64,000 bases of DNA, taken from Phyllobates terribilis (lineage: Eukaryota). This document shows, in pieces, positions 3,431-29,339 of the stretch. The position numbers and the translations under genes were made by a program. The stretch is taken from assembly GCF_046119375.1 (NCBI RefSeq), contig NW_027362773.1:115382001-115446000 (forward strand), given 5' to 3'. Under the pieces are notes generated by a model. That model was given only the letters and a program-made list of their open reading frames with translations, ran no database searches and was not told where the DNA came from. How positions within the stretch are numbered: the first letter of the stretch is position 1; the number at the start of each line of letters is the position of its first letter.

Positions 3431-3990
3431 GAGGGAGTGAGGCGTCCAAGCGCAGCTGATAGCTGATAGCGGAATGCTGCTCACTGGTGGGTGACCATGG
3501 CGGTCAGGGAGTTCGGAGGCTTCAGGACGGCGCTTATAAACAGCCTGTATAATGGAGGCCCTGCTGCTGGCTTCTCTGACTTCAACTAGGACTATAGTAA
3601 AATGTATCACCAGAGATGTAGGTCGGGCTCACACGTGACCCATGAATAAGGACTAGTGTCAATCCCAAACGCGTCAGCGTCATACACACCTTCAGTTTTT
3701 ATGACTTTTTTTTTATTTAATAAATTTGTTTTTTTGACTTACTGAGGATTTTCTGTTAGGTGCTGGACTTTGGTTTTTCCGGTTTCTCTGTTGCCTCCGT
3801 CGGGGGTCACACATTTCGCGGTCCGTGTACAGATCGCACAGCCTTCTAGACGTATATGAGGCGTTACGTTCGGATCGGGAGACCTGCGCTTAGTATACAG
3901 ACCGGGAAATGCGATCCTGGCCTTAGACTGGTTTCAGATGTCCGTGTTTCATAGCCGAGTACCCAGGCAATGATGCATGGACCGACCGCT

Positions 3991-6900
3991 GGTGTCCTGA
4001 CCCAGGCTCGGCAGTCTCATGGCCTTGGGTCTCCTGACCCAGGCTCTGCAATCTCATGGCCTGGGTCTCCTGACCCAGGATCGGCAGTCTCATGGCCGTG
4101 GGTCTCCTGACCCAGGCTCGGCAGTCTCATGGCCGCGGGTCTCCTGACCCAGGCACAGCAGTCTCATGGCCGTGGGTCTCCTGACCCAGTCTCGGCAGTC
4201 TCATGACCGCGGGTCTCCTGAGCCAGGCTCGGCAGTCTCATGACCGCGGGTCTCCTGAGCCAGGCTCGGCAATCTCATGGCCCTGGGTCTCCTGACCCAG
4301 GCTCTGCAATCTCATGGCCGTGGGTCTCCTGACCCAGGCTCTGCAGTCTCATGACCGCGGGTCTCCTGACCCAGGCTCAGCAGTCCCATCGCCGCGGGTC
4401 TCCTGACCCAGGCTCGGCAGCCCCATGGCCGCGGGTCTCCTGACACAAGCTCTGCATTCCCATGGCCACGGGTCTGCTGACCCAAGCCCTGAAGTCCCAT
4501 GGTCGCGGGTCTCCTGACCCAGGCTTGGCAGTCTCATGGCCGTGGGTCTCCTGACCCAGGCTCGGCAGTCTCATGGCCGTGGGTCTCCTGACCCATGCTC
4601 GGCAGTCTCATGGCCGCGGGTCTCCTGACCCAGGCTCGGCAGTCCCATGGCCGCGGGTCTCCTGACCCAGGCTCGGCAGTTCCATGGCCGCGGGTCTCCT
4701 GACCCAGGCTCGGCAGTCCCATGACCGCGGGTCTCCTGACCCAAACTCGGCAGTCCCATGGCCGCGGGTCTCGTGACCCATGCTCGGCAGTCTCATGGCC
4801 CCGGGTCTCCTGACCCAGGCTCGGCAGTCTCGTGGCCGCGGGTCTCCTGACCCAGGCTCAGCAGTCTCATGGCCGCGGGTCTCCTGACCCAGGCTCAGCA
4901 GTCTCATGGCCGCTGGTCTCCTGACCTAGGCTTGGCAATCCAATTGCCGCAGGTCTCCTGACCCAGGCTCGGCAGTCCCATGGTCGCGGGTCTCCTGACA
5001 CAAGCTCTACATTCCCATGGCCACGGGTCTGCTGACCCAAGCTCTGAAGTCCCATGGTCGCTGGTCTTCTGACCCATGCTCGGCAATCTCATGGTCGCGG
5101 GATTCCTGACCTTTGCTTGGCAATCCCATGGCCACGGGTCTGCTGACCCAAGCTCTGAAGTCCCATGGTCGCGGGTGTTCTGACCCAAGCTTGGCAGTCC
5201 CATGGCCACGGATCTCCTGACCCAGGCTCGGCAATCCCATGGTCGTGGGACTCCTGACCCATGCTCGGCAGGCCCATGGTCGCAGGTCTTCTGACCCAGG
5301 CTTGGCAGTCCTATGGTCGCGGGTCTCCTGACCCAGGCTCGGCAGTCCCATGGTCGCGAGTCTTCTGACCCAGGCTCGGCAGTCTCATGGCCGTGGGTCT
5401 CCTGACCCAGGCTCGGCAGTCTCATGGCCGTGGGTCTCCTGACTCAGGCTCGGCAGTCTCATGGCCGCGGGTCTCCTGACCCAAGCTCGGCAGTCTCATG
5501 GCCCCGGGTCTCCTGACCCAGGCTCGGCAGTCTCATGGCCGCGGGTCTCCTGACCCAGGCTCAGCAGTCTCATGGCTGCTGGTCTCCTGACCCAGGCTCG
5601 GCAATCCAATTGCCGCAGGTCTCCTGACCCAGGCTCGGCAGTCCCATGGTCGTGGGTCTCCTGACACAAGCTCTGCATTCCCATGGCCACGGGTCTGCTG
5701 ACCCAAGCTCTGAAGTCCCATGGTCGCGGGTCTCCTGACCCAGGCTCAGCAGTCTCATGGCCGCGGGTCTCCTGACCCAAGCTCGGCAGTCTCATGGCCC
5801 CGGGTCTCCTGACCCAGGCTCGGCAGTCTCATGGCCGCGGGTCTCCTGACCCAGGCTCAGCAGTCTCATGGCCGCTGGTCTCCTGACCTAGGCTTGGCAA
5901 TCCAATTGCCGCAGGTCTCCTGACCCAGGCTCGGCAGTCCCATGGTCGCGGGTCTCCTGACACAAGCTCTACATTCCCATGGCCACGGGTCTGCTGACCC
6001 AAGCTCTGAAGTCCCATGGTCGCTGGTCTTCTGACCCATGCTCGGCAATCTCATGGTCGCGGGATTCCTGACCTTTGCTTGGCAGTCCCATGGCCACGGG
6101 TCTGCTGACCCAAGCTCTGAAGTCCCATGGTCGCGGGTGTTCTGACCCAAGCTTGGCAGTCCCATGGCCACGGATCTCCTGACCCAGGCTCGGCAATCCC
6201 ATGGTCGTGGGACTCCTGACCCATGCTCGGCAGGCCCATGGTCGCAGGTCTTCTGACCCAGGCTTGGCAGTCCTATGGTCGCGGGTCTCCTGACCCAGGC
6301 TCGGCAGTCCCATGGTCGCGAGTCTTCTGACCCAGGCTCGGCAGTCTCATGGCCGTGGGTCTCCTGACCCAGGCTCGGCAGTCTCATGGCCCCGGGTCTC
6401 CTGACCCAGGCTCGGCAGTCTCATGGCCGCGGGTCTCCTGACCCAAGCTCGGCAGTCTCATGGCCGCGGGTCTCCTGACCCAGGCTCAGCAGTCTCATGG
6501 CCGCTGGTCTCCTGACCCAGGCTCGGCAATCCAATTGCCGCAGGTCTCCTGACCCAGGCTCGGCAATCCAATTGCCGCAGGTCTCCTGACCCAGGCTCGG
6601 CAGTCCCATGGTCGTGGGTCTCCTGACACAAGCTCTGCATTCCCATGGCCACGGGTCTGCTGACCCAAGCTCTGAAGTCCCATGGTCGCGGGTCTCCTGA
6701 CCCAGGCTTGGCAGTCTCATGGCCCCGGGTCTCCTGACCCAGGCTCGGCAGTCTCATGGCCGCGAGTCTCCTGACCCAGGCTCAGCAGTCTCATGGCCGC
6801 GGGTCTCCTGACCCAAGCTCGGCAGTCTCATGGCCCTGGGTCTCCTGACCCAGGCTCGGCAGTCTCTTGGCCGCGGGTCTCCTGACCCAGGCTCAGCAGT

Positions 6901-9900
6901 CTCATGGCCGCTGGTCTCCTGAGCCAGGCTCGGCAATCCAATTGCCGCAGGTCTCCTGACCCAGGCTCGGCAGTCCCATGGTCGTGGGTCTCCTGACACA
7001 AGCTCTGCATTCCCATGGCCACGGGTCTGCTGACCCAAGCTCTGAAGTCCCATGGTCGCAGGTCTCCTGACCCAGGCTTGGCAGTCTCATGGCCATGGGT
7101 CTCCTGACCCAGGCTCGGCAGTCTCATGGCCGTGGGTCTCCTGACCCAGGCTCGGCAGTCTCATGGCCGCGGGTCTCCTGACCCAGGCTCAGCAGTCTCA
7201 TGGCCGCAGGTCTCCTGACCCAGGCTCAGCAGTCTCATGGCCGCTGGTCTCCTGACCCAGGCTTGGCAATCCAATTGCCGCAGGTCTCCTGACCCAGGCT
7301 CGGCAGTCCCATGGTCGCGGGTCTCCTGACACAAGCTCTGCATTCCCATGGCCACGTGTCTGCTGACCCAAGCTCTGAAGTCCCATGGTCGCGGGTCTTC
7401 TGACCCAGGCTCGGCAATCTCATGGTCGCTGGATTCCTGACCTATGCTTGGCAGTCCCATGGCCACGGGTCTGCTGATCCAAGCTCTGAAGTCCCATGGT
7501 CGCGGGTGTTCTGACCCAAGCTTGGCAGTCCCATGGCCACGGATCTCCTGACCCAGGCTCGGCAATCCCATGGTCGTGGGACTCCTGACCCATGCTCGGC
7601 AGGCCCATGGTTGCAGGTCTTCTGACCCAGGCTTGGCAGTCCTATGGTCACGGGTCTCCTGACCCAGGCTCGGCAGTCCCATGGTCGCGGGTCTTCTGAC
7701 CCAGGCTCGGCAGTCTCATGGCCGTGGGTCTCCTGACCCAGGCTCGGCAGTCTCATGGCCCCGGGTCTCCTGACCCAGGCTCGGCAGTCTCATGGCCGCG
7801 GGTCTCCTGACCCAGGCTCAGCAGTCTCATGGCCGCGGGTCTCCTGACCCAGGCTCAGCAGTCTCATGGCCGCTGGTCTCCTGACCCAGGCTCGGCAATC
7901 CAATTGCCGCAGGTCTCCTGACCCAGGCTCGGCAATCCAATTGCCGCAGGTCTCCTGACCCAGGCTCGGCAGTCCCATGGTCGTGGGTCTCCTGACACAA
8001 GCTCTGCATTCCCATGGCCACGGGTCTGCTGACCCAAGCTCTGAAGTCCCATGGTCGCGGGTCTCCTGACCCAGGCTCTGCAGTCTCATGGCCGCTGGTC
8101 TCCTGACCCAGGCTCGGCAATCCAATTGCCGCAGGTCTCCTGACCCAGGCTCGGCAGTCCCATGGTCGTGGGTCTCCTGACACAAGCTCTGCATTCCCAT
8201 GGCCACGGGTCTGCTGACCCAAGCTCTGAAGTCCCATGGTCGCAGGTCTCCTGACCCAGGCTTGGCAGTCTCATGGCCATGGGTCTCCTGACCCAGGCTC
8301 GGCAGTCTCATGGCCGTGGGTCTCCTGACCCAGGCTCGGCAGTCTCATGGCCGCGGGTCTCCTGACCCAGGCTCAGCAGTCTCATGGCCGCGGGTCTCCT
8401 GACCCAGGCTCAGCAGTCTCATGGCCGCTGGTCTCCTGACCCAGGCTTGGCAATCCAATTGCCGCAGGTCTCCTGACCCAGGCTCGGCAGTCCCATGGTC
8501 GCGGGTCTCCTGACACAAGCTCTGCATTCCCATGGCCACGTGTCTGCTGACCCAAGCTCTGAAGTCCCATGGTCGCGGGTCTTCTGACCCAGGCTCGGCA
8601 ATCTCATGGTCGCGGGATTCCTGACCTATGCTTGGCAGTCCCATGGCCACGGGTCTGCTGACCCAAGCTCTGAAGTCCCATGGTCGCGGGTGTTCTGACC
8701 CAAGCTTGGCAGTCCCATGGCCACGGATCTCCTGACCCAGGCTCGGCAATCCCATGGTCGTGGGACTCCTGACCCATGCTCGGCAGGCCCATGGTTGCAG
8801 GTCTTCTGACCCAGGCTTGGCAGTCCTATGGTCACGGGTCTTCTGACCCAGGCTCGGCAGTCCCATGGCCGTGGGTCTCCTGACCCAGGCTCGGCAGTCT
8901 CATGGCCCCGGGTCTCCTGACCCAGGCTCGGCAGTCTCATGGCCGCGGGTCTCCTGACCCAGGCTCAGCAGTCTCATGGCCGCGGGTCTCCTGACCCAGG
9001 CTCAGCAGTCTCATGGCCGCTGGTCTCCTGACCCAGGCTCGGCAATCCAATTGCCGCAGGTCTCCTGACCCAGGCTCGGCAATCCAATTGCCGCAGGTCT
9101 CCTGACCCAGGCTCGGCAGTCCCATGGTCGTGGGTCTCCTGACACAAGCTCTGCATTCCCATGGCCACGGGTCTGCTGACCCAAGCTCTGAAGTCCCATG
9201 GTCGCGGGTCTCCTGACCCAGGCTCTGCAGTCTCATGGCCGCTGGTCTCCTGACCCAGGCTCGGCAATCCAATTGCCGCAGGTCTCCTGACCCAGGCTCG
9301 GCAGTCCCATGGTCGTGGGTCTCCTGACACAAGCTCTGCATTCCCATGGCCACGGGTCTGCTGACCCAAGCTCTGAAGTCCCATGGTCGCAGGTCTCCTG
9401 ACCCAGGCTTGGCAGTCTCATGGCCATGGGTCTCCTGACCCAGGCTCGGCAGTCTCATGGCCGTGGGTCTCCTGACCCAGGCTCGGCAGTCTCATGGCCG
9501 CGGGTCTCCTGACCCAGGCTCAGCAGTCTCATGGCCGCGGGTCTCCTGACCCAGGCTCAGCAGTCTCATGGCCGCTGGTCTCCTGACCCAGGCTTGGCAA
9601 TCCAATTGCCGCAGGTCTCCTGACCCAGGCTCGGCAGTCCCATGGTCGCGGGTCTCCTGACACAAGCTCTGCATTCCCATGGCCACGTGTCTGCTGACCC
9701 AAGCTCTGAAGTCCCATGGTCGCGGGTCTTCTGACCCAGGCTCGGCAATCTCATGGTCGCGGGATTCCTGACCTATGCTTGGCAGTCCCATGGCCACGGG
9801 TCTGCTGACCCAAGCTCTGAAGTCCCATGGTCGTGGGTGTTCTGACCCAAGCTTGGCAGTCCCATGGCCACGGATCTCCTGACCCAGGCTCGGCAATCCC

Positions 9901-12900
9901 ATGGTCGTGGGACTCCTGACCCATGCTCGGCAGGCCCATGGTTGCAGGTCTTCTGACCCAGGCTTGGCAGTCCTATGGTCACGGGTCTCCTGACCCAGGC
10001 TCGGCAGTCCCATGGTCGCGGGTCTTCTGACCCAGGCTCGGCAGTCTCATGGCCGTGGGTCTCCTGACCCAGGCTCGGCAGTCTCATGGCCCCGGGTCTC
10101 CTGACCCAGGCTCGGCAGTCTCATGGCCGCGGGTCTCCTGACCCAGGCTCAGCAGTCTCATGGCCGCGGGTCTCCTGACCCAGGCTCAGCAGTCTCATGG
10201 CCGCTGGTCTCCTGACCCAGGCTCGGCAATCCAATTGCCGCAGGTCTCCTGACCCAGGCTCGGCAATCCAATTGCCGCAGGTCTCCTGACCCAGGCTCGG
10301 CAGTCCCATGGTCGTGGGTCTCCTGACACAAGCTCTGCATTCCCATGGCCACGGGTCTGCTGACCCAAGCTCTGAAGTCCCATGGTCGCGGGTCTCCTGA
10401 CCCAGGCTCTGCAGTCTCATGGCCGCTGGTCTCCTGACCCAGGCTCGGCAATCCAATTGCCGCAGGTCTCCTGACCCAGGCTCGGCAGTCCCATGGTCGT
10501 GGGTCTCCTGACACAAGCTCTGCATTCCCATGGCCACGGGTCTGCTGACCCAAGCTCTGAAGTCCCATGGTCGCAGGTCTCCTGACCCAGGCTTGGCAGT
10601 CTCATGGCCATGGGTCTCCTGACCCAGGCTCGGCAGTCTCATGGCCGTGGGTCTCCTGACCCAGGCTCGGCAGTCTCATGGCCGCGGGTCTCCTGACCCA
10701 GGCTCAGCAGTCTCATGGCCGCGGGTCTCCTGACCCAGGCTCAGCAGTCTCATGGCCGCTGGTCTCCTGACCCAGGCTTGGCAATCCAATTGCCGCAGGT
10801 CTCCTGACCCAGGCTCGGCAGTCCCATGGTCGCGGGTCTCCTGACACAAGCTCTGCATTCCCATGGCCACTTGTCTGCTGACCCAAGCTCTGAAGTCCCA
10901 TGGTCGCGGGTCTTCTGACCCAGGCTCGGCAATCTCATGGTCGCGGGATTCCTGACCTATGCTTGGCAGTCCCATGGCCACGGGTCTGCTGACCCAAGCT
11001 CTGAAGTCCCATGGTCGTGGGTGTTCTGACCCAAGCTTGGCAGTCCCATGGCCACGGATCTCCTGACCCAGGCTCGGCAATCCCATGGTCGTGGGACTCC
11101 TGACCCATGCTCGGCAGGCCCATGGTTGCAGGTCTTCTGACCCAGGCTTGGCAGTCCTATGGTCACGGGTCTCCTGACCCAGGCTCGGCAGTCCCATGGT
11201 CGCGGGTCTTCTGACCCAGGCTCGGCAGTCTCATGGCCGTGGGTCTCCTGACCCAGGCTCGGCAGTCTCATGGCCCCGGGTCTCCTGACCCAGGCTCGGC
11301 AGTCTCATGGCCGCGGGTCTCCTGACCCAGGCTCAGCAGTCTCATGGCCGCGGGTCTCCTGACCCAGGCTCAGCAGTCTCATGGCCGCTGGTCTCCTGAC
11401 CCAGGCTCGGCAATCCAATTGCCGCAGGTCTCCTGACCCAGGCTCGGCAGTCCCATGGTCGTGGGTCTCCTGACACAAGCTCTGCATTCCCATGGCCACG
11501 GGTCTGCTGACCCAAGCTCTGAAGTCCCATGGTCGCGGGTCTCCTGACCCAGGCTTGGCAGTCTCATGGCCATGGGTCTCCTGACCCAGGCTCGACAGTC
11601 TCATGGCCGTGGGTCTCCTGACCCAGGCTCGGCAGTCTCATGGCCGTTGGTCTCCTGACCCAGGCTCGGCAGTCTCATTGCCGCGGGTCTCCTGACCCAG
11701 GCTCGGCAGTCCCATGGCCGCGGGTCTCCTGACCCAGGCTCGGCAGTCCCATGGCCGCGGGTCTCCTGACTCAAGCTCGGCAGTCCCATGGCCGCGGGTC
11801 TCCTGACCCAAGCTCGGCAGTCTCATGGCCCCGGGTCTCCTGACCCAGGCTCGGCAGTCTCATGGCCGCGGGTCTCCTGACCCAGGCTCGGCAGTCTCAT
11901 GGCCGCGGGTCTCCTGACCCAGGCTCAGCAGTCACATGGCCGCTGGTCTCCTGACCCAGGCTCGGCAATCCAATTGCCGCAGGTCTCCTGACCCAGGCTC
12001 GGCAGTCCCATGGTCGCGGGTCTCCTGACACAAGCTCTGCATTCCCATGGCCACGGGTCTGCTGACCCAAGCTCTGAAGTCCCATGGTCGCGGGTCTTCT
12101 GACCCAGGCTCGGCAATCTCATGGTCGCAGGATTCCTGACCAATGCTTGGCAGTCCAATGGCCACGGGTCTGCTGACCCAAGCTCTGAAGTCCCATGGTC
12201 GCGGGTGTTCTGACCCAAGCTTGGCAGTCCCATGGCCACGGATCTCCTGACCCAGGCTCGGCAATCCCATGGTCGTGGGACTCCTGACCCATGCTCGGCA
12301 GGCCCATGGTCGCAGGTCTTCTGACCCAGGCTTGGCAGTCCTATGGTCACGGGTCTCCTGACCCAGGCTTGGCAGTCCCATGGTCACGGGTCTTCTGACC
12401 CAGGCTCGGCAGTCTCATGACCGTGGGTCTCCTGACCCAGGCTCGGCAGTCCCATGGCCGCGGGTCTCCTGACCCAAGCTCGGCAGTCCCATGGCCGCGG
12501 GTCTCGTGACCCATGCTCGGCAGTCTCATGGCCCCGGGTCTCCTGACCCAGGCTCGGCAGTCTCATGGCCGCGGGTCTCCTGACCCAGGCTCAGCAGTCT
12601 CATGGCCGCGGGTCTCCTGACCCAGGCTCAGCAGTCTCATGGCCGCTGGTCTCCTGACCCAGGCTTGGCAATCCAATTGCCGCAGGTCTCCTGACCCAGG
12701 CTCGGCAGTCCCATGGTCGCGGGTCTCCTGACACAAGCTCTGCATTCCCATGGCCACGGGTCTGCTGACCCAAGCTCTGAAGTCCCATGGTCGCGGGTCT
12801 TCTGACCCATGCTCGGCAATCTCATGGTCGCGGGATTCCTGACCTTTGCTTGGCAGTCCCATGGCCACGGGTCTGCTGACCCAAGCTCTGAAGTCCCATG

Positions 12901-15900
12901 GTCGCGGGTGTTCTGACCCAAGCTTGGCAGTCCCATGGCCACGGATCTCCTGACCCAGGCTCGGCAATCCCATGGTCGTGGGACTCCTGACCCATGCTCG
13001 GCAGGCCCATGGTCGCAGGTCTTCTGACCCAGGCTTGGCAGTCCTATGGTCGCGGGTCTCCTGACCCAGGCTCGGCAGTCCCATGGTCGCGGGTCTTCTG
13101 ACCCAGGCTCGGCAGTCTCATGGCCGTGGGTCTCCTGAACCAGGCTCGGCAGTCTCATGGCCGTGGGTCTCCTGACCCAGGCTCGGCAGTCTCATGGCCG
13201 CGGGTCTCCTGACCCAAGCTCGGCAGTCTCATGGCCCCGGGTCTCCTGACCCAGGCTCGGCAGTCTCATGGCCGCGGGTCTCCTGACCCAGGCTCAGCAG
13301 TCTCATGGCCGCGGGTCTCCTGACCCAGGCTCAGCAGTCTCATGGCCGCTGGTCTCCTGACACAGGCTCGGCAATCCAATTGCCGCAGGTCTCCTGACCC
13401 AGGCTCAGCAGTCCCATGGTCGTGGGTCTCCTGACACAAGCTCTGCATTCGCATGGCCACGGGTCTGCTGACCCAAGCTCTGAAGTCCCATGGTCGTGGG
13501 TCTCCTGACCCAGGCTTGGCAGTCTCATGGCCATGGGTCTCCTGACCCAGGCTCGGCAGTCTCATGGCCGTGGGTCTCCTGACCCAGGCTCGGCAGTCTC
13601 ATGGCCGCGGGTCTCCTGACCGAGGCTCAGCAGTCTCATGGCCGCGGGTCTCCTGACCCAGGCTCAGCAGTCTCATGGCCGCTGGTCTCCTGACCCAGGC
13701 TTGGCAATCAAATTACCGCAGGTCTCCTGACCCAGGCTCGGCAGTCCCATGGTCGTGGGTCTCCTGACACAAGCTCTGCATTCCCATGGCCATGGGTCTG
13801 CTGACCCAAGCTCTGAAGTCCCATGGTCGCGGGTCTCCTGACCCAGGCTCAGCAGTCTCATGGCCGCTGGTCTCCTGACTCAGGCTCGGCAATCCAATTG
13901 CCGCAGGTCTCCTGACCCAGGCTCGGCAGTCCCATGGTCGTGGGTCTCCTGACACAAGCTCTGCATTCCCATGGCCACGGGTCTGCTGACCCAAGCTCTG
14001 AAGTCCCATGGTCGCAGGTCTCCTGAACCAGGCTTGGCAGTCTCATGGCCATGGGTCTCCTGACCCAGGCTCGGCAGTCTCATGGCCGCGGGTCTCCTGA
14101 CCCAGGCTCAGCAGTCTCATGGCCGCGGGTCTCCTGACCCAGGCTCAGCAGTCTCATGGCCGCTGGTCTCCTGACCCAGGCTCGGCAATCCAATTGCCGC
14201 AGGTCTCCTGACCCAGGCTCGGCAATCCAATTGCCGCAGGTCTCCTGACCCAGGCTCGGCAGTCCCATGGTCGTGGGTCTCCTGACACAAGCTCTGCATT
14301 CCCATGGCCACGGGTCTGCTGACCCAAGCTCTGAAGTCCCATGGTCGCGGGTCTCCTGACCCAGGCTCTGCAGTCTCATGGCCGCTGGTCTCCTGACCCA
14401 GGCTCGGCAATCCAATTGCCGCAGGTCTCCTGACCCAGGCTCGGCAGTCCCATGGTCGTGGGTCTCCTGACACAAGCTCTGCATTCCCATGGCCACGGGT
14501 CTGCTGACCCAAGCTCTGAAGTCCCATGGTCGCAGGTCTCCTGACCCAGGCTTGGCAGTCTCATGGCCATGGGTCTCCTGACCCAGGCTCGGCAGTCTCA
14601 TGGCCGTGGGTCTCCTGACCCAGGCTCGGCAGTCTCATGGCCGCGGGTCTCCTGACCCAGGCTCAGCAGTCTCATGGCCGCGGGTCTCCTGACCCAGGCT
14701 CAGCAGTCTCATGGCCGCGGGTCTCCTGACCCAGGCTCAGCAGTCTCATGGCCGCGGGTCTCCTGACCCAGGCTTGGCAATCCAATTGCCGCAGGTCTCC
14801 TGACCCAGGCTCGGCAGTCCCATGGTCGCGGGTCTCCTGACACAAGCTCTGCATTCCCATGGCCACGTGTCTGCTGACCCAAGCTCTGAAGTCCCATGGT
14901 CGCGGGTCTTCTGACCCAGGCTCGGCAATCTCATGGTCGCGGGATTCCTGACCTATGCTTGGCAGTCCCATGGCCACGGGTCTGCTGACCCAAGCTCTGA
15001 AGTCCCATGGTCGCGGGTGTTCTGACCCAAGCTTGGCAGTCCCATGGCCACGGATCTCCTGACCCAGGCTCGGCAATCCCATGGTCGTGGGACTCCTGAC
15101 CCATGCTCGGCAGGCCCATGGTTGCAGGTCTTCTGACCCAGGCTTGGCAGTCCTATGGTCACGGGTCTCCTGACCCAGGCTCGGCAGTCCCATGGTCGCG
15201 GGTCTTCTGACCCAGGCTCGGCAGTCTCATGGCCGTGGGTCTCCTGACCCAGGCTCGGCAGTCTCATGGCCCCGGGTCTCCTGACCCAGGCTCGGCAGTC
15301 TCATGGCCGCGGGTCTCCTGACCCAGGCTCAGCAGTCTCATGGCCGCGGGTCTCCTGACCCAGGCTCAGCAGTCTCATGGCCGCTGGTCTCCTGACCCAG
15401 GCTCGGCAATCCAATTGCCGCAGGTCTCCTGACCCAGGCTCGGCAATCCAATTGCCGCAGGTCTCCTGACCCAGGCTTGGCAGTCCCATGGTCGTGGGTC
15501 TCCTGACACAAGCTCTGCATTCCCATGGCCACGGGTCTGCTGACCCAAGCTCTGAAGTCCCATGGTCGCGGGTCTCCTGACCCAGGCTCTGCAGTCTCAT
15601 GGCCGCTGGTCTCCTGACCCAGGCTCGGCAATCCAATTGCCGCAGGTCTCCTGACCCAGGCTCGGCAGTCCCATGGTCGTGGGTCTCCTGACACAAGCTC
15701 TGCATTCCCATGGCCACGGGTCTGCTGACCCAAGCTCTGAAGTCCCATGGTCGCAGGTCTCCTGACCCAGGCTTGGCAGTCTCATGGCCATGGGTCTCCT
15801 GACCCAGGCTCGGCAGTCTCATGGCCGTGGGTCTCCTGACCCAGGCTCGGCAGTCTCATGGCCGCGGGTCTCCTGACCCAGGCTCAGCAGTCTCATGGCC

Positions 15901-18900: not shown

Positions 18901-21900
18901 GGTCTTCTGACCCAGGCTCGGCAATCTCATGGTCGCGGGATTCCTGACCTATGCTTGGCAGTCCCATGGCCACGGGTCTGCTGACCCAAGCTCTGAAGTC
19001 CCATGGTCGCGGGTGTTCTGACCCAAGCTTGGCAGTCCCATGGCCACGGATCTCCTGACCCAGGCTCGGCAATCCCATGGTCGTGGGACTCCTGACCCAT
19101 GCTTGGCAGGCCCATGGTTGCAGGTCTTCTGACCCAGGCTTGGCAGTCCTATGGTCACGGGTCTCCTGACCCAGGCTCGGCAGTCCCATGGTCGCGGGTC
19201 TTCTGACCCAGGCTCGGCAGTCTCATGGCCGTGGGTCTCCTGACCCAGGCTCGGCAGTCTCATGGCCCCGGGTCTCCTGACCCAGGCTCGGCAGTCTCAT
19301 GGCCGCGGGTCTCCTGACCCAGGCTCAGCAGTCTCATGGCCGCGGGTCTCCTGACCCAGGCTCAGCAGTCTCATGGCCGCTGGTCTCCTGACCCAGGCTC
19401 GGCAATCCAATTGCCGCAGGTCTCCTGACCCAGGCTCGGCAATCCAATTGCCGCAGGTCTCCTGACCCAGGCTCGGCAGTCCCATGGTCGTGGGTCTCCT
19501 GACACAAGCTCTGCATTCCCATGGCCACGGGTCTGCTGACCCAAGCTCTGAAGTCCCATGGTCGCGGGTCTCCTGACCCAGGCTTGGCAGTCTCATGGCC
19601 ATGGGTCTCCTGACCCAGGCTCGACAGTCTCATGGCCGTGGGTCTCCTGACCCAGGCTCGGCAGTCTCATGGCCGTGGGTCTCCTGACCCAGGCTCGGCA
19701 GTCTCATTGCCGCGGGTCTCCTGACCCAGGCTCGGCAGTCCCATGGCCGCGGGTCTCCTGACCCAGGCTCGGCAGTCCCATGGCCGCGGGTCTCCTGACT
19801 CAAGCTCGGCAGTCCCATGGCCGCGGGTCTCCTGACCCAAGCTCGGCAGTCTCATGGCCCCGGGTCTCCTGACCCAGGCTCGGCAGTCTCATGGCCGCGG
19901 GTCTCCTGACCCAGGCTCGGCAGTCTCATGGCCGCGGGTCTCCTGACCCAGGCTCAGCAGTCACATGGCCGCTGGTCTCCTGACCCAGGCTCGGCAATCC
20001 AATTGCCGCAGGTCTCCTGACCCAGGCTCGGCAGTCCCATGGTCGCGGGTCTCCTGACACAAGCTCTGCATTCCCATGGCCACGGGTCTGCTGACCCAAG
20101 CTCTGAAGTCCCATGGTCGCGGGTCTTCTGACCCAGGCTCGGCAATCTCATGGTCGCAGGATTCCTGACCAATGCTTGGCAGTCCAATGGCCACGGGTCT
20201 GCTGACCCAAGCTCTGAAGTCCCATGGTCGCGGGTGTTCTGACCCAAGCTTGGCAGTCCCATGGCCACGGATCTCCTGACCCAGGCTCGGCAATCCCATG
20301 GTCGTGGGACTCCTGACCCATGCTCGGCAGGCCCATGGTCGCAGGTCTTCTGACCCAGGCTTGGCAGTCCTATGGTCACGGGTCTCCTGACCCAGGCTCG
20401 GCAGTCCCATGGTCACGGGTCTTCTGACCCAGGCTCGGCAGTCTCATGACCGTGGGTCTCCTGACCCAGGCTCGGCAGTCCCATGGCCGCGGGTCTCCTG
20501 ACCCAAGCTCGGCAGTCCCATGGCCGCGGGTCTCGTGACCCATGCTCGGCAGTCTCATGGCCCCGGGTCTCCTGACCCAGGCTCGGCAGTCTCATGGCCG
20601 CGGGTCTCCTGACCCAGGCTCAGCAGTCTCATGGCCGCGGGTCTCCTGACCCAGGCTCAGCAGTCTCATGGCCGCTGGTCTCCTGACCCAGGCTTGGCAA
20701 TCCAATTGCCGCAGGTCTCCTGACCCAGGCTCGGCAGTCCCATGGTCGCGGGTCTCCTGACACAAGCTCTGCATTCCCATGGCCACGGGTCTGCTGACCC
20801 AAGCTCTGAAGTCCCATGGTCGCGGGTCTTCTGACCCATGCTCGGCAATCTCATGGTCGCGGGATTCCTGACCTTTGCTTGGCAGTCCCATGGCCACGGG
20901 TCTGCTGACCCAAGCTCTGAAGTCCCATGGTCGCGGGTGTTCTGACCCAAGCTTGGCAGTCCCATGGCCACGGATCTCCTGACCCAGGCTCGGCAATCCC
21001 ATGGTCGTGGGACTCCTGACCCATGCTCGGCAGGCCCATGGTCGCAGGTCTTCTGACCCAGGCTTGGCAGTCCTATGGTCGCGGGTCTCCTGACCCAGGC
21101 TCGGCAGTCCCATGGTCGCGGGTCTTCTGACCCAGGCTCGGCAGTCTCATGGCCGTGGGTCTCCTGAACCAGGCTCGGCAGTCTCATGGCCGTGGGTCTC
21201 CTGACCCAGGCTCGGCAGTCTCATGGCCGCGGGTCTCCTGACCCAAGCTCGGCAGTCTCATGGCCCCGGGTCTCCTGACCCAGGCTCGGCAGTCTCATGG
21301 CCGCGGGTCTCCTGACCCAGGCTCAGCAGTCTCATGGCCGCGGGTCTCCTGACCCAGGCTCAGCAGTCTCATGGCCGCGGGTCTCCTGACCCAGGCTCAG
21401 CAGTCTCATGGCCGCTGGTCTCCTGACCCAGGCTCGGCAATCCAATTGCCGCAGGTCTCCTGACCCAGGCTCAGCAGTCCCATGGTCGTGGGTCTCCTGA
21501 CACAAGCTCTGCATTCGCATGGCCACGGGTCTGCTGACCCAAGCTCTGAAGTCCCATGGTCGTGGGTGTCCTGACCCAGGCTTGGCAGTCTCATGGCCAT
21601 GGGTCTCCTGACCCAGGCTCGGCAGTCTCATGGCCGTGGGTCTCCTGACCCAGGCTCGGCAGTCTCATGGCCGCGGGTCTCCTGACCCAGGCTCAGCAGT
21701 CTCATGGCCGCGGGTCTCCTGACCCAGGCTCAGCAGTCTCATGGCCGCTGGTCTCCTGACCCAGGCTTGGCAATCAAATTACCGCAGGTCTCCTGACCCA
21801 GGCTCGGCAGTCCCATGGTCGTGGGTCTCCTGACACAAGCTCTGCATTCCCATGGCCACGGGTCTGCTGACCCAAGCTCTGAAGTCCCATGGTCGCGGGT

Positions 21901-24900
21901 CTCCTGACCCAGGCTCAGCAGTCTCATGGCCGCTGGTCTCCTGACTCAGGCTCGGCAATCCAATTGCCGCAGGTCTCCTGACCCAGGCTCGGCAGTCCCA
22001 TGGTCGTGGGTCTCCTGACACAAGCTCTGCATTCCCATGGCCACGGGTCTGCTGACCCAAGCTCTGAAGTCCCATGGTCGCATGTCTCCTGACCCAGGCT
22101 TGGCAGTCTCATGGCCATGGGTCTCCTGACCCAGGCTCGGCAGTCTCATGGCCGTGGGTCTCCTGACCCAGGCTCGGCAGTCTCATGGCCGCGGGTCTCC
22201 TGACCCAGGCTCAGCAGTCTCATGGCCGCGGGTCTCCTGACCCAGGCTCAGCAGTCTCATGGCCGCTGGTCTCCTGACCCAGGCTTGGCAATCCAATTGC
22301 CGCAGGTCTCCTGACCCAGGCTCGGCAGTCCCATGGTCGCGGGTCTCCTGACACAAGCTCTGCATTCCCATGGCCACGTGTCTGCTGACCCAAGCTCTGA
22401 AGTCCCATGGTCGCGGGTCTTCTGACCCAGGCTCGGCAATCTCATGGTCGCGGGATTCCTGACCTATGCTTGGCAGTCCCATGGCCACGGGTCTGCTGAC
22501 CCAAGCTCTGAAGTCCCATGGTCGCGGGTGTTCTGACCCAAGCTTGGCAGTCCCATAGCCACGGATCTCCTGACCCAGGCTCGGCAATCCCATGGTCGTG
22601 GGACTCCTGACCCATGCTTGGCAGGCCCATGGTTGCAGGTCTTCTGACCCAGGCTTGGCAGTCCTATGGTCACGGGTCTCCTGACCCAGGCTCGGCAGTC
22701 CCATGGTCGCGGGTCTTCTGACCCAGGCTCGGCAGTCTCATGGCCGTGGGTCTCCTGACCCAGGCTCGGCAGTCTCATGGCCCCGGGTCTCCTGACCCAG
22801 GCTCGGCAGTCTCATGGCCGCGGGTCTCCTGCCCCAGGCTCAGCAGTCTCATGGCCGCGGGTCTCCTGACCCAGGCTCAGCAGTCTCATGGCCGCTGGTC
22901 TCCTGACCCAGGCTCGGCAATCCAATTGCCGCAGGTCTCCTGACCCAGGCTCGGCAATCCAATTGCCGCAGGTCTCCTGACCCAGGCTCGGCAGTCCCAT
23001 GGTCGTGGGTCTCCTGACACAAGCTCTGCATTCCCATGGCCACGGGTCTGCTGACCCAAGCTCTGAAGTCCCATGGTCGCGGGTCTCCTGACCCAGGCTT
23101 GGCAGTCTCATGGCCATGGGTCTCCTGACCCAGGCTCGACAGTCTCATGGCCGTGGGTCTCCTGACCCAGGCTCGGCAGTCTCATGGCCGTGGGTCTCCT
23201 GACCCAGGCTCGGCAGTCTCATGGCCGCGGGTCTCCTGACCCAGGCTCGGCAGTCCCATGGCCGCGGGTCTCCTGACCCAGGCTCGGCAGTCCCATGGCC
23301 GCGGGTCTCCTGACTCAAGCTCGGCAGTCCCATGGCCGCGGGTCTCCTGACCCAAGCTCGGCAGTCTCATGGCCCCGGGTCTCCTGACCCAGGCTCGGCA
23401 GTCTCATGGCCGCGGGTCTCCTGACCCAGGCTCGGCAGTCTCATGGCCGCGGGTCTCCTGACCAAGGCTCAGCAGTCACATGGCCGCTGGTCTCCTGACC
23501 CAGGCTCGGCAATCCAATTGCCGCAGGTCTCCTGACCCAGTCTCGGCAGTCCCATGGTCGCGGGTCTCCTGACACAAGCTCTGCATTCCCATGGCCACGG
23601 GTCTGCTGACCCAAGCTCTGAAGTCCCATGGTCGCGGGTCTTCTGACCCAGGCTCGGCAATCTCATGGTCGCAGGATTCCTGACCAATGCTTGGCAGTCC
23701 AATGGCCACGGGTCTGCTGACCCAAGCTCTGAAGTCCCATGGTCGCGGGTGTTCTGACCCAAGCTTGGCAGTCCCATGGCCACGGATCTCCTGACCCAGG
23801 CTCGGCAATCCTATGGTCGTGGGACTCCTGACCCATGCTCGGCAGGCCCATGGTCGCAGGTTTTCTGACCCAGGCTTGGCAGTCCTATGGTCACGGGTCT
23901 CCTGACCCAGGCTCGGCAGTCCCATGGTCACGGGTCTTCTGACCCAGGCTCGGCAGTCTCATGACCGTGGGTCTCCTGACCCAGGCTCGGCAGTCCCATG
24001 GCCGCGGGTCTCCTGACCCAAGCTCGGCAGTCCCATGGCCGCGGGTCTCGTGACCCATGCTCGGCAGTCTCATGGCCCCGGGTCTCCTGACCCAGGCTCG
24101 GCAGTCTCATGGCCGCGGGTCTCCTGACCCAGGCTCAGCAGTCTCATGGCCGCGGGTCTCCTGACCCAGGCTCAGCAGTCTCATGGCCGCTGGTCTCCTG
24201 ACCCAGGCTTGGCAATCCAATTGCCTCAGGTCTCCTGACCCAGGCTCGGCAGTCCCATGGTCGCGGGTCTCCTGACACAAGCTCTGCATTCCCATGGCCA
24301 CGGGTCTGCTGACCCAAGCTCTGAAGTCCCATGGTCGCGGGTCTTCTGACCCATGCTCGGCAATCTCATGGTCGCGGGATTCCTGACCTTTGCTTGGCAG
24401 TCCCATGGCCACGGGTCTGCTGACCCAAGCTCTGAAGTCCCATGGTCGCGGGTGTTCTGACCCAAGCTTGGCAGTCCCATGGCCACGGATCTCCTGACCC
24501 AGGCTCGGCAATCCCATGGTCGTGGGACTCCTGACCCATGCTCGGCAGGCCCATGGTCGCAGGTCTTCTGACCCAGGCTTGGCAGTCCTATGGTCGCGGG
24601 TCTCCTGACCCAGGCTCGGCAGTCCCATGGTCGCGGGTCTTCTGACCCAGGCTTGGCAGTCTCATGGCCGTGGGTCTCCTGAACCAGGCTCGGCAGTCTC
24701 ATGGCCGTGGGTCTCCTGACCCAGGCTCTGCAGTCTCATGGCCGCGGGTCTCCTGACCCAAGCTCGGCAGTCTCATGGCCCCGGGTCTCCTGACCCAGGC
24801 TCGGCAGTCTCATGGCCGCGGGTCTCCTGACCCAGGCTCAGCAGTCTCATGGCCGCGGGTCTCCTGACCCAGGCTCAGCAGTCTCATGGCCGCTGGTCTC

Positions 24901-27900
24901 CTGACCCAGGCTCGGCAATCCAATTGCCGCAGGTCTCCTGACCCAGGCTCAGCAGTCCCATGGTCGTGGGTCTCCTGACACAAGCTCTGCATTCGCATGG
25001 CCACGGGTCTGCTGACCCAAGCTCTGAAGTCCCATGATCGTGGGTCTCCTGACCCAGGCTTGGCAGTCTCATGGCCATGGGTCTCCTGACCCAGGCTCGG
25101 CAGTCTCATGGCCGTGGGTCTCCTGACCCAGGCTCGGCAGTCTCATGGCCGCGGGTCTCCTGACCCAGGCTCAGCAGTCTCATGGCCGCGGGTCTCCTGA
25201 CCCAGGCTCAGCAGTCTCATGGCCGCTGGTCTCCTGACCCAGGCTTGGCAATCAAATTACCGCAGGTCTCCTGACCCAGGCTCGGCAGTCCCATGGTCGC
25301 GGGTCTCCTGACACAAGCTCTGCATTCCCATGGCCACGTGTCTGCTGACCCAAGCTCTGAAGTCCCATGGTCGCAGGTCTTCTGACCCAGGCTCGGCAAT
25401 CTCATGGTCGCGGGATTCCTGACCTATGCTTGGCAGTCCCATGGCCACGGGTCTGCTGACCCAAGCTCTGAAGTCCCATAGTCGCGGGTGTTCTGACCCA
25501 AGCTTGGCAGTCCCATGGCCACGGATCTCCTGACCCAGGCTCGGCAATCCCATGGTCGTGGGACTCCTGACCCATGCTCGGCAGGCCCATGGTCGCAGGT
25601 CTTCTGACCCAGGCTTGGCAGTCCTATGGTCACGGGTCTCCTGACCCAGGCTCGGCAGTCTCATGGCCGTGGGTCTCCTGACCCAGGCTCGGCAGTCTCA
25701 TGGCCCCGGGTCTCCTGACCCAGGCTCGGCAGTCTCATGGCCGCGGGTCTCCTGACCCAGGCTCAGCAGTCTCATGGCCGCGGGTCTCCTGACCCAGGCT
25801 CAGCAGTCTCATGGCCGCTGGTCTCCTGACCCAGGCTCGGCAATCCAATTGCCGCAGGTCTCCTGACCCAGGCTCGGCAATCCAATTGCCGCAGGTCTCC
25901 TGACCCAGGCTCGGCAGTCCCATGGTCGTGGGTCTCCTGACACAAGCTCTGCATTCCCATGGCCACGGGTCTGCTGACCCAAGCTCTGAAGTCCCATGGT
26001 CGCGGGTCTCCTGACCCAGGCTTGGCAGTCTCATGGCCATGGGTCTCCTGACCCAGGCTCGGCAGTCTCATGGCCGTGGGTCTCCTGACCCAGGTTCGGC
26101 AGTCTCATGGCCGTGGGTCTCCTGACCCAGGCTCGGCAGTCTCTTGGCCGCGGGTCTCCTGACCCAGGCTCGGCAGTCCCATGGCCGCGGGTCTCCTGAC
26201 CCAGGCTCGGCAGTCCCATGGCCGCGGGTCTCCTGACCCAAGCTCGGCAGTCTCATGGCCCCGGGTCTCCTGACCCAGGCTCGGCAGTCTCATGGCCGCG
26301 GGTCTCCTGACCCAGGCTCGGCAGTCTCATGGCCGCGGGTCTCCTGACCCAGGCTCAGCAGTCACATGGCCGCTGGTCTCCTGACCCAGGCTCGGCAATC
26401 CAATTGCCGCAGGTCTCCTGACCCAGGCTTGGCAGTCCCATGGTCGCGGGTCTCCTGACACAAGCTCTGCATTCCCATGGCCACGGATCTGCTGACCCAA
26501 GCTCTGAAGTCCCATGGTCGCGGGTCTTCTGACCCAGGCTCGGCAATCTCATGGTCGCAGGATTCCTGACCAATGCTTGGCAGTCCAATGGCCACGGGTC
26601 TGCTAACCCAAGCTCTGAAGTCCCATGGTCGCGGGTGTTCTGACCTAAGCTTGGCAGTCCCATGGCCACGGATCTCCTGACCCAGGCTCGGCAATCCCAT
26701 GGTCGTGGGACTCCTGACCCATGCTCGGCAGGCCCATGGTCGCAGGTCTTCTGACCCAGGCTTGGCAGTCCTATGGTCACGGGTCTCCTGACCCAGGCTC
26801 GGCAGTCCCATGACCGTGGGTCTCCTGACCCAGTCTCGGCAGTCTCATGGCCGTGGGTCTCCTGACCCAGGCTTGGCAGTCTCATGGCCGCGGGTCTCCT
26901 GACCCAGGCTCGGCAGTCCCATGGCCTCGGGTCTCCTGACCCAGGCTCGGCAGTCCCATGGCCGCGGGTCTCCTGACCCAAGCTCGGCAGTCCCATGGCC
27001 ACGGGTTTCCTGACCCAAGCTCGGCAGTCTCATGGCCCCGGGTCTCCTGACCCAGGCTCGGCAGTCTCATGGCCCCGGGTCTCTTGACCCAGGCTCAGCA
27101 GTCCCATGGTCGCGGGTCTCCTGACACAAGCTCAGCATTCCCATGGCCACGGGTCTGCTGACCCAAGCTCTGAAGTCCCATGGTCGCGGGTCTTCTGACC
27201 CAGGCTCGGCAGTCCCATGGTCGCGGGTCTTCTGACCCAGGCTCGGCAGTCTCATGGCCGTGGGTCTCCTGACCCAGGCTCGGCAGTCTCATGGCCGTGG
27301 GTCTCCTGACCCAGGCTCGGCAGTCTCATGGCCGTGGGTCTCCTGACCGCGGGTCTCATGGCCGCGGGTCTCCTGACCCAAGCTCGGCAGTCTCATGGCC
27401 CCGGGTCTCCTGACCCAGGCTCGGCAGTCTCATGGCCGCGGGTCTCCTGACCCAGGCTCAGCAGTCTCATGGCCGCGGGTCTCCTGACTCAGGCTCGGCA
27501 ATCCAATTGCCGCAGGTCTCCTGACCCAAGCTCGGCAGTCCCATGGTCGCGGGTCTCCTGACACAAGCTCTGCATTCCCATGGCCACGGGTCTGCTGACC
27601 CAAGCTCTGAAGTCCCATGGTCGCGGGTCTTCTGACCCAGGCTCGGCAGTCCCATGGCCGCGGGTCTCCTGACCCAGGCTCGGCAGTCTCATGGCCGCGG
27701 GTCTCCTGACCCAGGCTCGGCAATCCAATTGCCGCAGGTCTCCTGACCCAGGCTCGGCAGTCCCATGGCTGCGGGTCTCCTGACCCAAGCTCGGCAGTCT
27801 CATGGCCCCGGGTCTCCTGACCCAGGCTTGGCAGTCTCATGGTCGCGGGTCTCCTGACCCAGGCTCAGCAGTCTCATGGCCGCGGGTCTCCTGACCCAGG

Positions 27901-28652
27901 CTCAGCAGTCTCATGGCCGCTGGTCTCCTGACCCAGGCTCTGCAATCCAATTGCCGCAGGTCTCCTGACCCAGGCTCGGCAGTCCCATGGTCGCGGGTCT
28001 CCTGACCCAGGCTCAGCAGTTCCATGGCCGCAGGTCTCCTGACCCAGGCTCAGCAGTCTCATGGCCGCTGGTCTCCTGACCCAGGCTCGGCAATCCAATT
28101 GCCGCAGGTCTTCTGACCCAGGCTTGGCAGTCCTATGGTCACGGGTCTCCTGACCCAGGCTCGGCAGTCACATGGTCGCGGGTCTTCTGACCCAAGCTCG
28201 GCCGTCCCACGGCCACGGGTCTCCTGACCCAGGCTTGGCAGTCTTATGACCGCGGGTCAGCTCACCCAAGCTCTGCATTTCCATGGTCGCGGGTCTCCTG
28301 ACCCAAGCTCTGCATTCCCATGGTCGCGGGTCTCCTGACACAAGCTCTGCATTCCCATGGTCGCAGGTCTCCTGACACAAGCTCTGCATCCCCATGGCCG
28401 CGGGTCTGCTGACCCAAGCTCTGAAGTCCCATGGTCGCGGGTCTTCTGACCCAGGCTCGGCAGTCCCATGGTCGCGGGTCTTCTGACCCAGGCTCGGCAG
28501 TCCCATGGTCGCGGGTCTTCTGACCCAGGCTTGGCAGTCCCATGGCCTCGGGTCTCCTGACCCAAGCTCGGCAGTCCCATGGCGCGAGTGTCCTGACCCA
28601 GGCTCGGCTGTCCTATGGCCACAGGTCTCCTGATCGGAGCTAGCCAGTCTCA
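3991..28652. repeat. 37-bp GC-rich satellite array (~666 copies) with higher-order repeats
   Basis: Consensus ggtctcctgacccaggctcggcagtctcatggccgcg. Recurrent pseudo-ORFs are offset by exact multiples of 37 (962, 1147, 1184, 2812, 3515, 5217, 8029). Confidence 0.99.
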
Positions 28653-29339
28653 TATATACATACTGTATAAGACTGCCACGTTTGGGTCAGGACGAGTACA
28701 GACCACAAAACACGGGGGTGCGAAACTGACCTATTATTCACTGAATAGGTGATCACTCGGGTCTGACCAGTCGGACAATGTGTGGATAGGACCGTAGTAC
28801 ACGTGTGATCACCACTCTATTCACTGTCCATGGATCTGATAACACAGATTCCTCATAAATCCCATAGACGTGAATAAAGGTGATTAGACTAATGATATTG
28901 TGGCATGGTCACTACCACGTACTGCTGCTTAGTGTCTATTCATTTTAGTAGAAGCTAAGGGGACGATTTTCTCGCTTGTCTTGAGGGGACTTGTTGGAGT
29001 GGAAGCTTCTGATTCATTAAGAGAAAAACGCCTCTTAATGAATTAGGCGAGGTGCGTAGTGGCCTCTGCCAGTCATAAATCTAAGGTATAGCGGACGCAG
29101 TTCGTCCCTTTAAAGGGACTCTGTCAGCACCGAATGACTGTTCAAACCAAGTACAGGCGCTCGGTGCTTCATGGCAAGACCAATCGTTTGCATACACCTT
29201 CTCACCTGCTTGGAACATTGTAGCTTCAGACTGAAGGCAGCAATACCATGAAGGAACACATGGAAACAAGGAGTAAAGAGATATGTGTGAAACAAACCGG
29301 AGTATATGTTAAGCCTTAGATTCCTCAAAGTACCCCCTT

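What the first reader, a model, noticed from the sequence alone, without database searches (positions are those of the whole stretch)
3853..28735. Satellite appears to have grown from one arm of a MITE hairpin: inverted monomers on both flanks
Right flank: the last unit (..gccagtctcata) is followed by an AT spacer and an inverted copy at 28666-28692, whose reverse complement tcctgacccaaacgtggcagtcttata matches the monomer at 21/26. A MITE-like end (cacgggggtgcgaaactgacc) follows. Left flank: 3853-3888 reverse-complements to cgcaggtctcccgatccgaacgtaacgcctcata. The same motif occurs dispersed in WDR74 intron 7. Inference: a transposon-seeded satellite captured with both its source element and its flanks visible.
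Basis: partly seen in the sequence, partly recalled or inferred. Interest (0 to 1): 0.8.

Follow-up and report, generated by a model that had tools for sequence, protein, structure and literature searches.

The report
Tandem array grown from hairpin-repeat arm
A 24.6-kb block of 667 copies of a 37-base unit in a frog-like genome grew from the inner half of one arm of an old hairpin-shaped repeat whose other parts still flank it; transposon-like repeats seeding tandem arrays is already known, in frogs too.

Summary
Window 3986-28655 is a very regular array of 667 units of 37 bp. Ten bases after its last unit lies an inverted unit-like copy (28666-28692, 21/27 matches; next best in 78,556 positions is 17).

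The main inference is largely right. A profile built only from four hairpin arms in the WDR74 region (41097-41455) matches the array's left flank running into the first unit (3924-4004, E 2e-8 to 2e-9). So the 37-bp unit is the innermost stretch of one arm of a palindromic repeat. Loop, opposite arm and both outer arms are still in place. Flanks plus one consensus unit fold into a 184-nt hairpin (z -4.8).

Two corrections:
- The left "inverted monomer" (3853-3888) belongs to a second, neighbouring hairpin copy, not to the source element.
- "MITE" is unproven. I found no target-site duplication. The right arm is single-copy at 80% likeness in reads of three samples. Only two loci are known, both in this window.

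Read depth suggests hundreds of units genome-wide, so this looks like a private large minisatellite, not a major satellite. Contigs of two samples confirm the right junction.

It is a new member of a known kind (Xenopus Xstir/miDNA4, Rana FEDoR, Drosophila Tetris). Unchecked notes of this scan report similar MITE-seeded arrays elsewhere in this genome.

The parts
3787..3925 (.). Hairpin copy A: a decayed, complete neighbouring copy of the palindromic repeat.
   Evidence: E-only profile hits 3913-3854(-) E 7e-4 and 3894-3854(-) E 3e-3. Profile with A included hits 3791-3865(+). blastn 3853-3891 vs 41183-41145 E 4e-5. The fold shows outer stems but z is only +0.4.
3925..3985 (+). Outer left arm of the source element B. 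It runs without a break into the first unit of the array.
   Evidence: A profile built only from the four WDR74-region arms aligns 3925-4004 collinearly to profile positions 3-81: 33.3 bits, E 1.6e-9; the maximum in 40 simulated windows is 9.5 bits. Rebuilt from an E-only alignment: E 2.4e-8.
3986..28655 (+). Array of 667 units of 37 bp, consensus CCGCGGGTCTCCTGACCCAGGCTCGGCAGTC(C/T)CATGG. It equals the innermost 37 positions of the arm. The last unit 28619-28655 is diverged and abuts the loop.
   Evidence: 663/666 spacings exactly 37 bp; 142 distinct unit variants; block duplications at lags of 31/32, 76, 95 and 217 units with runs of up to 26 identical units. GC 0.645, CpG o/e 0.49.
28656..28665 (.). 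AT-rich loop of the hairpin (ATACATACTG).
   Evidence: Read directly. Family copies also have AT-rich centres.
28666..28692 (-). Opposite inner arm of element B (inverted, unit-like).
   Evidence: 21/27 to the unit, the unique best of 78,556 positions. It keeps the family state CCCAAAC where the array has CCCAGGC. Contigs of samples S1 and S2 span array, loop, arm and flank.
28693..28741 (-).
   Evidence: The family outer motif matches 14/18 at 28698(-), 6 nt outside the inner arm; only 4 non-training hits that good in 78.5k positions. In the fold of the reconstituted element it pairs with 3931-3948. Not significant on its own by the E-only profile or by arm-to-arm alignment.
41097..41272 (.). 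Hairpin copy E1 (WDR74 region): unexpanded, one unit-equivalent per arm.
   Evidence: 100-bp self-complementary stretch 41134-41232 at 64%; alignment of half-elements.
41262..41455 (.). Hairpin copy E2, directly abutting E1; the best preserved copy.
   Evidence: 160-bp palindrome 41279-41438, 68% self-complementary, E 3e-14. Fold z -3.8 / -4.5.

Best explanation
An old, roughly 190-bp palindromic (foldback, MITE-like) repeat sat here next to a second copy of itself. The same pairing is seen in the unexpanded pair E1-E2, 37 kb away. In one copy (B) the innermost 37 bp of the left arm, from CCGC up to the edge of the AT-rich loop, was duplicated in tandem. This probably happened by slippage or template switching at the hairpin, perhaps helped by the short CAT(GG) repeat that bounds the segment. 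The array then grew to about 667 units by unequal exchange, which moved blocks of tens of units. Shown: the collinearity of left flank plus first unit with the family arm; the loop and inverted arm at the right edge; the block duplications; the right junction in two samples. Inferred: the direction (arm to array), the initiating mechanism, and that the repeat family is or was mobile. No function is indicated. CpG decay in the array equals that of the flanks, so it looks like neutral DNA.
For: A profile built only from the WDR74-region arms hits 3924/3925-4004 across the flank/array boundary (E 1.6e-9; alignment and simulated-window control; E 2.4e-8 with an independent alignment). The inverted arm is 10 nt after the last unit, 21/27, unique in the window. 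It carries the family state AAAC, not the array state AGGC; only 1 of 667 units has AAC there. So it is not a recently flipped array unit. The outer motif lies next to it in the right orientation. Flanks plus one consensus unit fold as a 184-nt hairpin, z -4.8, like the intact copy E2 at z -4.5. Units differ from each other by about 15%, while family copies differ by 40-50%, so the array is younger than the family. Summed depth of array units is about 200-370 times single-copy depth, the order expected from this one array. Runs of 18-26 identical units at fixed lags show unequal exchange.
Against: The right outer arm is not independently significant (E about 8 with the E-only profile; arm-to-arm alignment p 0.04-0.08). 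With the real last unit the hairpin is weak (z -1.55 for the core; z -2.7 for the whole). No target-site duplication or sharp termini were found. The right arm has no relatives at >=80% in three samples. Only two loci of the family are known, both in this window, so mobility is unproven. The left junction and the array length rest on the assembly alone. No orthologous site was examined.
Confidence: 0.7

Rival explanations
1. The source repeat is not a transposon. A palindromic piece of about 360 bp (two abutting hairpins) was copied once within this region by an ancient local duplication, and one arm later expanded. The array's origin from the arm stands; only the 'MITE' label falls.
For: Both known loci lie in one 64-kb window and both are pairs of abutting hairpins. 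No TSD was found. The right arm is single-copy at >=80%. There is no similarity to the Tc1-like TIRs or the other palindromic repeats of the window.
Against: The four hairpins differ by independent deletions and are only 40-60% alike. That fits an old multi-copy family, which reads at >=80% could not detect. The window, and by unchecked notes the genome, is full of palindromic MITEs.
Confidence: 0.2
2. The direction is reversed. A tandem repeat came first and the hairpin family's arms were built from, or captured, one of its units, as proposed for miDNA4 in Xenopus. This array would then be a remnant or re-expansion of the older repeat.
For: Every family arm holds exactly one unit-equivalent. 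The review PMC12628747 describes this capture model.
Against: Units are much more alike (about 85%) than the family arms are (40-60%). Depth gives no sign of other arrays. The unit is collinear with the arm and shares its boundary with the loop.
Confidence: 0.07
3. The array is unrelated to any hairpin element. Its terminal unit was flipped by a local inversion or snap-back repair, and the other resemblances are chance.
For: The junction hairpin is weak (z -1.55). The outer arms are not significantly complementary.
Against: The non-array left flank 3925-3985 matches the independent E profile. The inverted arm has family-specific states that the array lacks. The outer motif lies beside it.
Confidence: 0.03

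Closest known systems
Xenopus Xstir / miDNA4 (Hikosaka & Kawahara 2004; Scalvenzi & Pollet 2014; as summarised in PMC12628747, and PMC12054243)
   Same: A frog MITE-like element whose internal sequence exists as one unit in most copies and as long tandem arrays in some. Composite element-plus-array structures occur. Two elements in close proximity, and short microhomologies, are invoked as triggers.
   Different: There the repeat lies between the terminal inverted repeats and the element is a proven Tc1/mariner MITE with many copies. Here the unit is the inner part of the inverted arm itself, mobility is unproven, and the array seems private to one locus. Sequence relatedness could not be tested because no reference sequences were available.
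FEDoR of Rana temporaria (PMC12054243)
   Same: The layout [inverted repeat fwd - rev - (TR)n - fwd - rev] matches this locus: hairpin A, array, then last unit / loop / inverted arm. Short GC-neutral units; a frog genome.
   Different: FEDoR is a conserved 3.5-kb dispersed unit with four internal repeat blocks, a 22-bp monomer and target-site duplications. Here the composite is not known to be dispersed, and the array is seven times longer than a whole FEDoR.
Tetris foldback transposon and its satellite in Drosophila virilis (Dias et al. 2014, cited in PMC12628747)
   Same: A foldback element whose arm sequence supplied the building block of a tandem array.
   Different: Tetris arms already consist of tandem subrepeats in both arms and the satellite is multi-locus. 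Here only one arm expanded, at one locus.
DTC84 tandem-repeat-containing MITE of the clam Donax trunculus (PMC3879986)
   Same: A MITE with a variable number of internal tandem units, linked to a satellite.
   Different: Up to a few units per element, many copies, invertebrate; the repeat is central, not an arm.

Membership tests
MITE | Short (<800 bp) and non-coding | tested here: met
   Hairpin copies are 140-195 bp and pairs about 320-360 bp. No Pfam or Rfam signal there.
MITE | Terminal inverted repeats | tested here: met
   E2 is a 160-bp palindrome at 68%. Reconstituted B folds with z -4.8. A and E1 are decayed.
MITE | Target-site duplication at defined termini | tested here: inconclusive
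   I inspected the ends of A-B and E1-E2. No duplication was recognisable; the copies are too old and too few to define termini.
MITE | Many dispersed copies in the genome | tested here: inconclusive
   Two loci (four hairpins) in the 39 kb of non-array sequence. But 28666-28745 is single-copy at >=80% likeness in three samples. Copies 40-60% alike could not be seen that way.
MITE | Ends related to an autonomous DNA transposon | tested here: not met
   No similarity above shuffled controls to the TIRs of the two Tc1-like elements or to three other palindromic repeats of the window. Only window elements could be tested.
Transposon-derived tandem array (Xstir/miDNA4-like) | The unit is homologous to an internal part of a dispersed element that elsewhere carries a single unit | tested here: met
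   The E-only profile is collinear across the flank/array boundary. A, E1 and E2 carry one unit-equivalent per arm.
Transposon-derived tandem array (Xstir/miDNA4-like) | Remains of the element flank the array on both sides | tested here: met
   Left outer arm 3925-3985; loop, inverted arm and outer motif 28656-28741.
Transposon-derived tandem array (Xstir/miDNA4-like) | Sequence homology to Xstir/miDNA4 or FEDoR themselves | not testable with these tools
   No reference sequences were available. Sequence words of the unit were not found in the paper library.
Foldback element with repetitive arms (FB/Tetris type) | Both arms made of tandem subrepeats | tested here: not met
   Only the left arm of B is expanded. 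The right arm and all other copies hold one unit.
Classical satellite DNA | Very abundant, at many loci or in heterochromatin | tested here: not met
   Summed depth of array units is only about 200-370 times single-copy depth in four runs, the order of this one array (the tool warns that depth is not a copy number). By unit and array size it is a large minisatellite.

The most novel reading that the evidence does not exclude
In this frog genome, hairpin (foldback) repeats may recurrently seed long arrays by one specific mechanism that duplicates exactly the inner arm up to the loop edge when two hairpins abut. With both breakpoints, the partner arm and a neighbouring hairpin preserved, this locus would give that mechanism's footprint. 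It could then be tested across the other MITE-linked arrays that the scan has noted in the same genome.
Probability: 0.2. Interest if true: 0.55.

Novelty: new member of a known kind. Interest (0 to 1): 0.35.

Why it matters
How tandem arrays are born is usually inferred from consensus comparisons, after the seed has been lost. Here a 24.6-kb array still sits inside its seed. The outer arm, loop and opposite arm are in place, and unexpanded relatives lie 37 kb away, so the duplicated segment and its two breakpoints can be read to the base. That makes the locus a useful worked example for hairpin-driven array birth in large, transposon-rich frog genomes, and a candidate length-polymorphic marker next to a promoter-like CpG island. 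It does not change the known picture: transposon-to-satellite transitions are well documented, also in frogs.

Tried and rejected
- Protein-database search with a 173-aa ORF read through the array, to find other arrays or species: no hit.
- Exact-pattern scans of metagenome contigs with the unit and with the family core: nothing.
- Rfam over the whole window at gathering thresholds: nothing, so the hairpins are not a known structured RNA or microRNA family.
- Unit and family words in the paper library: nothing. The Rana temporaria tandem-repeat paper holds no matching sequence and no supplements as text.
- Similarity of the hairpin arms to the long TIRs of the two Tc1-like elements and to other palindromic repeats of the window: not above shuffled controls.
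- Large inverted or direct repeats joining the wider left and right flanks (a bigger composite element): none at word size 11.
- Complementarity of the two outer arms of B taken alone: not significant.
- Target-site duplications: none recognisable.
- A gradient of units towards the family state at the array edges: none. Only the very last unit is diverged.
- Earlier-findings look-up by sequence: blank.
- The idea that the array is a CpG island: rejected, since its CpG o/e of 0.49 equals that of the flanks.
Full report
**1. What is there**

TRF reports one array at 3986-28633 with period 37, 666 copies and 86% matches. The array has GC 0.64, against 0.38-0.50 around it.

My own segmentation gives 667 units up to 28655. 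Of 666 spacings, 663 are exactly 37 bp; the exceptions are 36, 30 and 36 bp.

- There are 142 distinct unit variants.
- Any two units are on average 85% alike.
- Identity peaks at lags of 31/32, 76, 95 and 217 units, with runs of up to 26 identical units. This is the signature of unequal exchange moving blocks of units.
- The most variable positions include the CpG sites of the unit.
- CpG o/e in the array is 0.49, the same as in the flanks. The array therefore behaves like ordinary methylated, neutrally decaying DNA.

The first unit (3986) is 3 mismatches from the consensus. The last unit (28619-28655) is 11 mismatches away.

**2.

*Right flank.* After the last unit comes ATACATACTG (28656-28665). 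Then comes 28666-28692, whose reverse complement matches the unit at 21 of 27 positions. Among 78,556 non-array positions on both strands this is the only match above 17/27. It is also the top hit of a unit profile. Its position, ten bases from the array end, cannot be chance.

*Left flank.* The quoted sequence at 3853-3888 is there. As a copy of the unit it is not significant (E 31). It is significantly related to the copies in the WDR74 region.

**3. A family of palindromic repeats**

The WDR74-region motif belongs to two abutting hairpins:

- E1: 41097-41272, with a 100-bp self-complementary core.
- E2: 41262-41455, a 160-bp palindrome, 68% self-complementary, E 3e-14. It folds well (z -3.8 to -4.5).

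I cut all hairpins at their centres and aligned the eight half-elements. They share one architecture:

- an outer motif, roughly TTCAGA..CTGTATTTCA.GGTC;
- a variable middle;
- an inner arm ACCGCAGGTCTCC.GACCCAAAC.TACAGC.T.ATAT that ends at an AT-rich centre.

**4. The decisive test**

I built a profile from the four E half-elements only, so it holds nothing from the array locus. Searched over the window, it hits 3925-4004 on the + strand with 33.3 bits and E 1.6e-9.

- The alignment is collinear from profile position 3 to 81. It runs from the outer motif (3933-3956) through ...GCATGGACCGA and straight into CCGCTGGTGTCCTGACCCA, the first unit of the array.
- In 40 simulated windows the best score was 9.5 bits.
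- Rebuilding the profile from an alignment of the four E halves alone gave E 2.4e-8.

So the sequence left of the array is the outer part of a family arm. The 37-bp unit occupies the last 37 positions of that arm, up to the loop.

The same profile hits 3913-3854 on the minus strand (E 7e-4 and 3e-3). It is the right arm of a separate hairpin copy A (3787-3925), which directly abuts the source element B, just as E1 abuts E2.

**5. The right side of element B**

The inverted inner arm carries CCCAAAC. That is the state of the family arms. The array consensus has CCCAGGC, and only one of 667 units reads AAC at those columns. It shares TCCTGA and GGCAGTCT with the array. This is the pattern expected of the partner arm of the very copy that expanded. 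It is not expected of an array unit that was recently flipped.

Six bases further out, the family's outer motif matches at 14/18 in the right orientation (28698). Only four non-training matches that good exist in 78.5k positions.

An internal deletion of about 30 bp separates the two pieces. This explains why a local profile search does not pick up the right arm as a whole (E about 8).

Taken alone, the two outer arms of B are not significantly complementary (p 0.04-0.08).

**6. Reconstitution**

I joined 3925-3985, one consensus unit and 28654-28741 into a 184-nt sequence.

- It folds as one long hairpin with DNA parameters: -37.3 kcal/mol against -22.3 +/- 3.1 for shuffles (z -4.8). The intact copy E2 gives z -4.5.
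- The fold includes short outer stems: CCGTGTTT with AAACACGG, and GTTTC with GAAAC.
- With the real, diverged last unit the value is z -2.7. The core hairpin alone gives z -1.55.

The target-site duplication part of that test is not.

**7. Reads**

Logan contigs of four runs from three samples were laid on 28546-29145 at >=80% likeness.

- Single contigs span array, loop, inverted arm and flank in sample S1 (no differences; this may be the assembly's own source) and in sample S2 (3 differences). A contig of S3 starts at 28664. The right junction is real.
- Single-copy depth is 8-13. The inverted arm and outer arm (28666-28745) have depth 8-16. They have no relatives at >=80% elsewhere in the genome, so this is not a young high-copy MITE.
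- The array bins sum to about 1,000-3,000, which is 200-370 times single-copy depth. That is the order expected from this one array. The tool warns that depth is not a copy number, so I read it only as "hundreds, not tens of thousands".

By unit size, array size and apparent single locus, this is a large minisatellite rather than a genome-wide satellite.

**8. Mechanism**

Shown:

- the position of the array inside the arm;
- the preserved partner parts;
- block duplications within the array.

Inferred:

- A first tandem duplication of the inner arm, most likely by slippage or template switching at a hairpin during replication.
- The segment is bounded on the left by GCATGG|ACCGA|CCGC and on the right by CTCAT|AT. 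The unit junction reads CATGG|CCGC. A short CAT(GG) microhomology may therefore have set the breakpoints, with loss of ACCGA. This detail is speculative.
- Growth then proceeded by unequal exchange.
- The presence of two abutting hairpins at both loci recalls the Hikosaka-Kawahara model for Xstir, in which two neighbouring elements form the structure that starts the repeat (PMC12628747).

**9. What it is not shown to be**

"MITE" remains a label of resemblance.

- Features met: size, lack of coding capacity, and inverted arms.
- Target-site duplication and termini could not be defined.
- Dispersal beyond this window is untested.
- No autonomous relative was found among the window's Tc1-like elements.
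- An ancient local duplication of a palindromic piece is a live alternative for the identity of the source. It does not affect the arm-to-array conclusion.

**10. Comparison and novelty**

Arrays that grow from MITE or foldback sequences are documented in:

- Xenopus (Xstir, miDNA4);
- Rana temporaria (FEDoR, whose layout of inverted-repeat pair, array, inverted-repeat pair is the same as here; PMC12054243);
- Donax (DTC84);
- Drosophila virilis (Tetris).

This is a new member of that kind, with one unusual point: the unit is the inner arm itself and only one arm expanded.

An unchecked note of this scan calls the genome the golden poison frog. Other unchecked notes list several MITE-seeded arrays on other pieces of it. 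I did not test any of these.

**11. Limits**

- The left junction and the array length rest on the assembly.
- The orthologous site in other species could not be reached.
- Family copy number is unknown.

Noticed in passing
window 29110 onwards: A repeat begins with TTAAAGGGACTCTGTCAGC. Summed contig depth is 45,000-135,000 against 8-13 for single copy. Hundreds of contigs break off at 29108-29110 into AT-rich, mutually unlike sequence. This is the end of a very high-copy element, TTAA/T2-MITE-like by my recollection of Xenopus TIRs.
   Followed up: partly
window 28982-29062: An 80-bp stretch has summed depth of about 750-3,900, and many contigs leave it at 29009 and at 29043/29047. This is a moderately abundant short dispersed repeat, partly palindromic (29009-29046).
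   Followed up: no
window 28574 joined to 29122: One contig each in three runs joins 24 letters of array-like sequence directly to the high-copy repeat, skipping 547 bases. The side is only 24 letters, so this may be another locus or a chance likeness.
   Followed up: no
window 38543-40175 and 47651-49344: Two Tc1/mariner-like elements with long, young terminal inverted repeats (275 bp at 97.8% and 259 bp at 97.7%). Their ORF pieces match HTH_Tnp_Tc3_2, Sleeping Beauty HTH and DDE_3. An older relative lies at 29382-30156.
   Followed up: partly
window 1962-2275, 37878-38177, 42913-43081 (copies at 51754-51945, 54309-54509, 63737-63860): Further palindromic MITE-like repeats, unrelated to the hairpin family studied here. 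They include a 314-bp palindrome at 83% and a family with at least four copies in the window.
   Followed up: no
window 45013-45795: A 49-bp tandem repeat, 16 copies, 97% matches, GC-rich.
   Followed up: no
window 2693-2920 and 32296-32666: Small minisatellites: 30/45-bp units left of the array, and 21-, 46- and 51-bp units to its right.
   Followed up: no
window 3100-3500: A CpG-island-like stretch (GC 0.58, CpG o/e 0.89) with TGACGTCA and CCGGAAGT motifs and a GTAAGT donor on the minus strand near 3254. This is probably a promoter and first exon about 300-700 bp left of hairpin A and the array.
   Followed up: no
window 52488-52886: An ORF matches the TMEM70/TMEM186/TMEM223 family (E 8e-13). 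From memory, a TMEM223-like gene lies near WDR74 in human.
   Followed up: no
window 27323-27378: Inside the array there is a short run of 15-bp units (GTCTCATGACCGCGG), made by deletion between the two GTCTC(C/A)TGnCC half-repeats of the 37-bp unit. The unit itself reads as a 22+15 bp imperfect internal repeat and holds a GGGTC-TCCT-GACCC mini-palindrome.
   Followed up: partly
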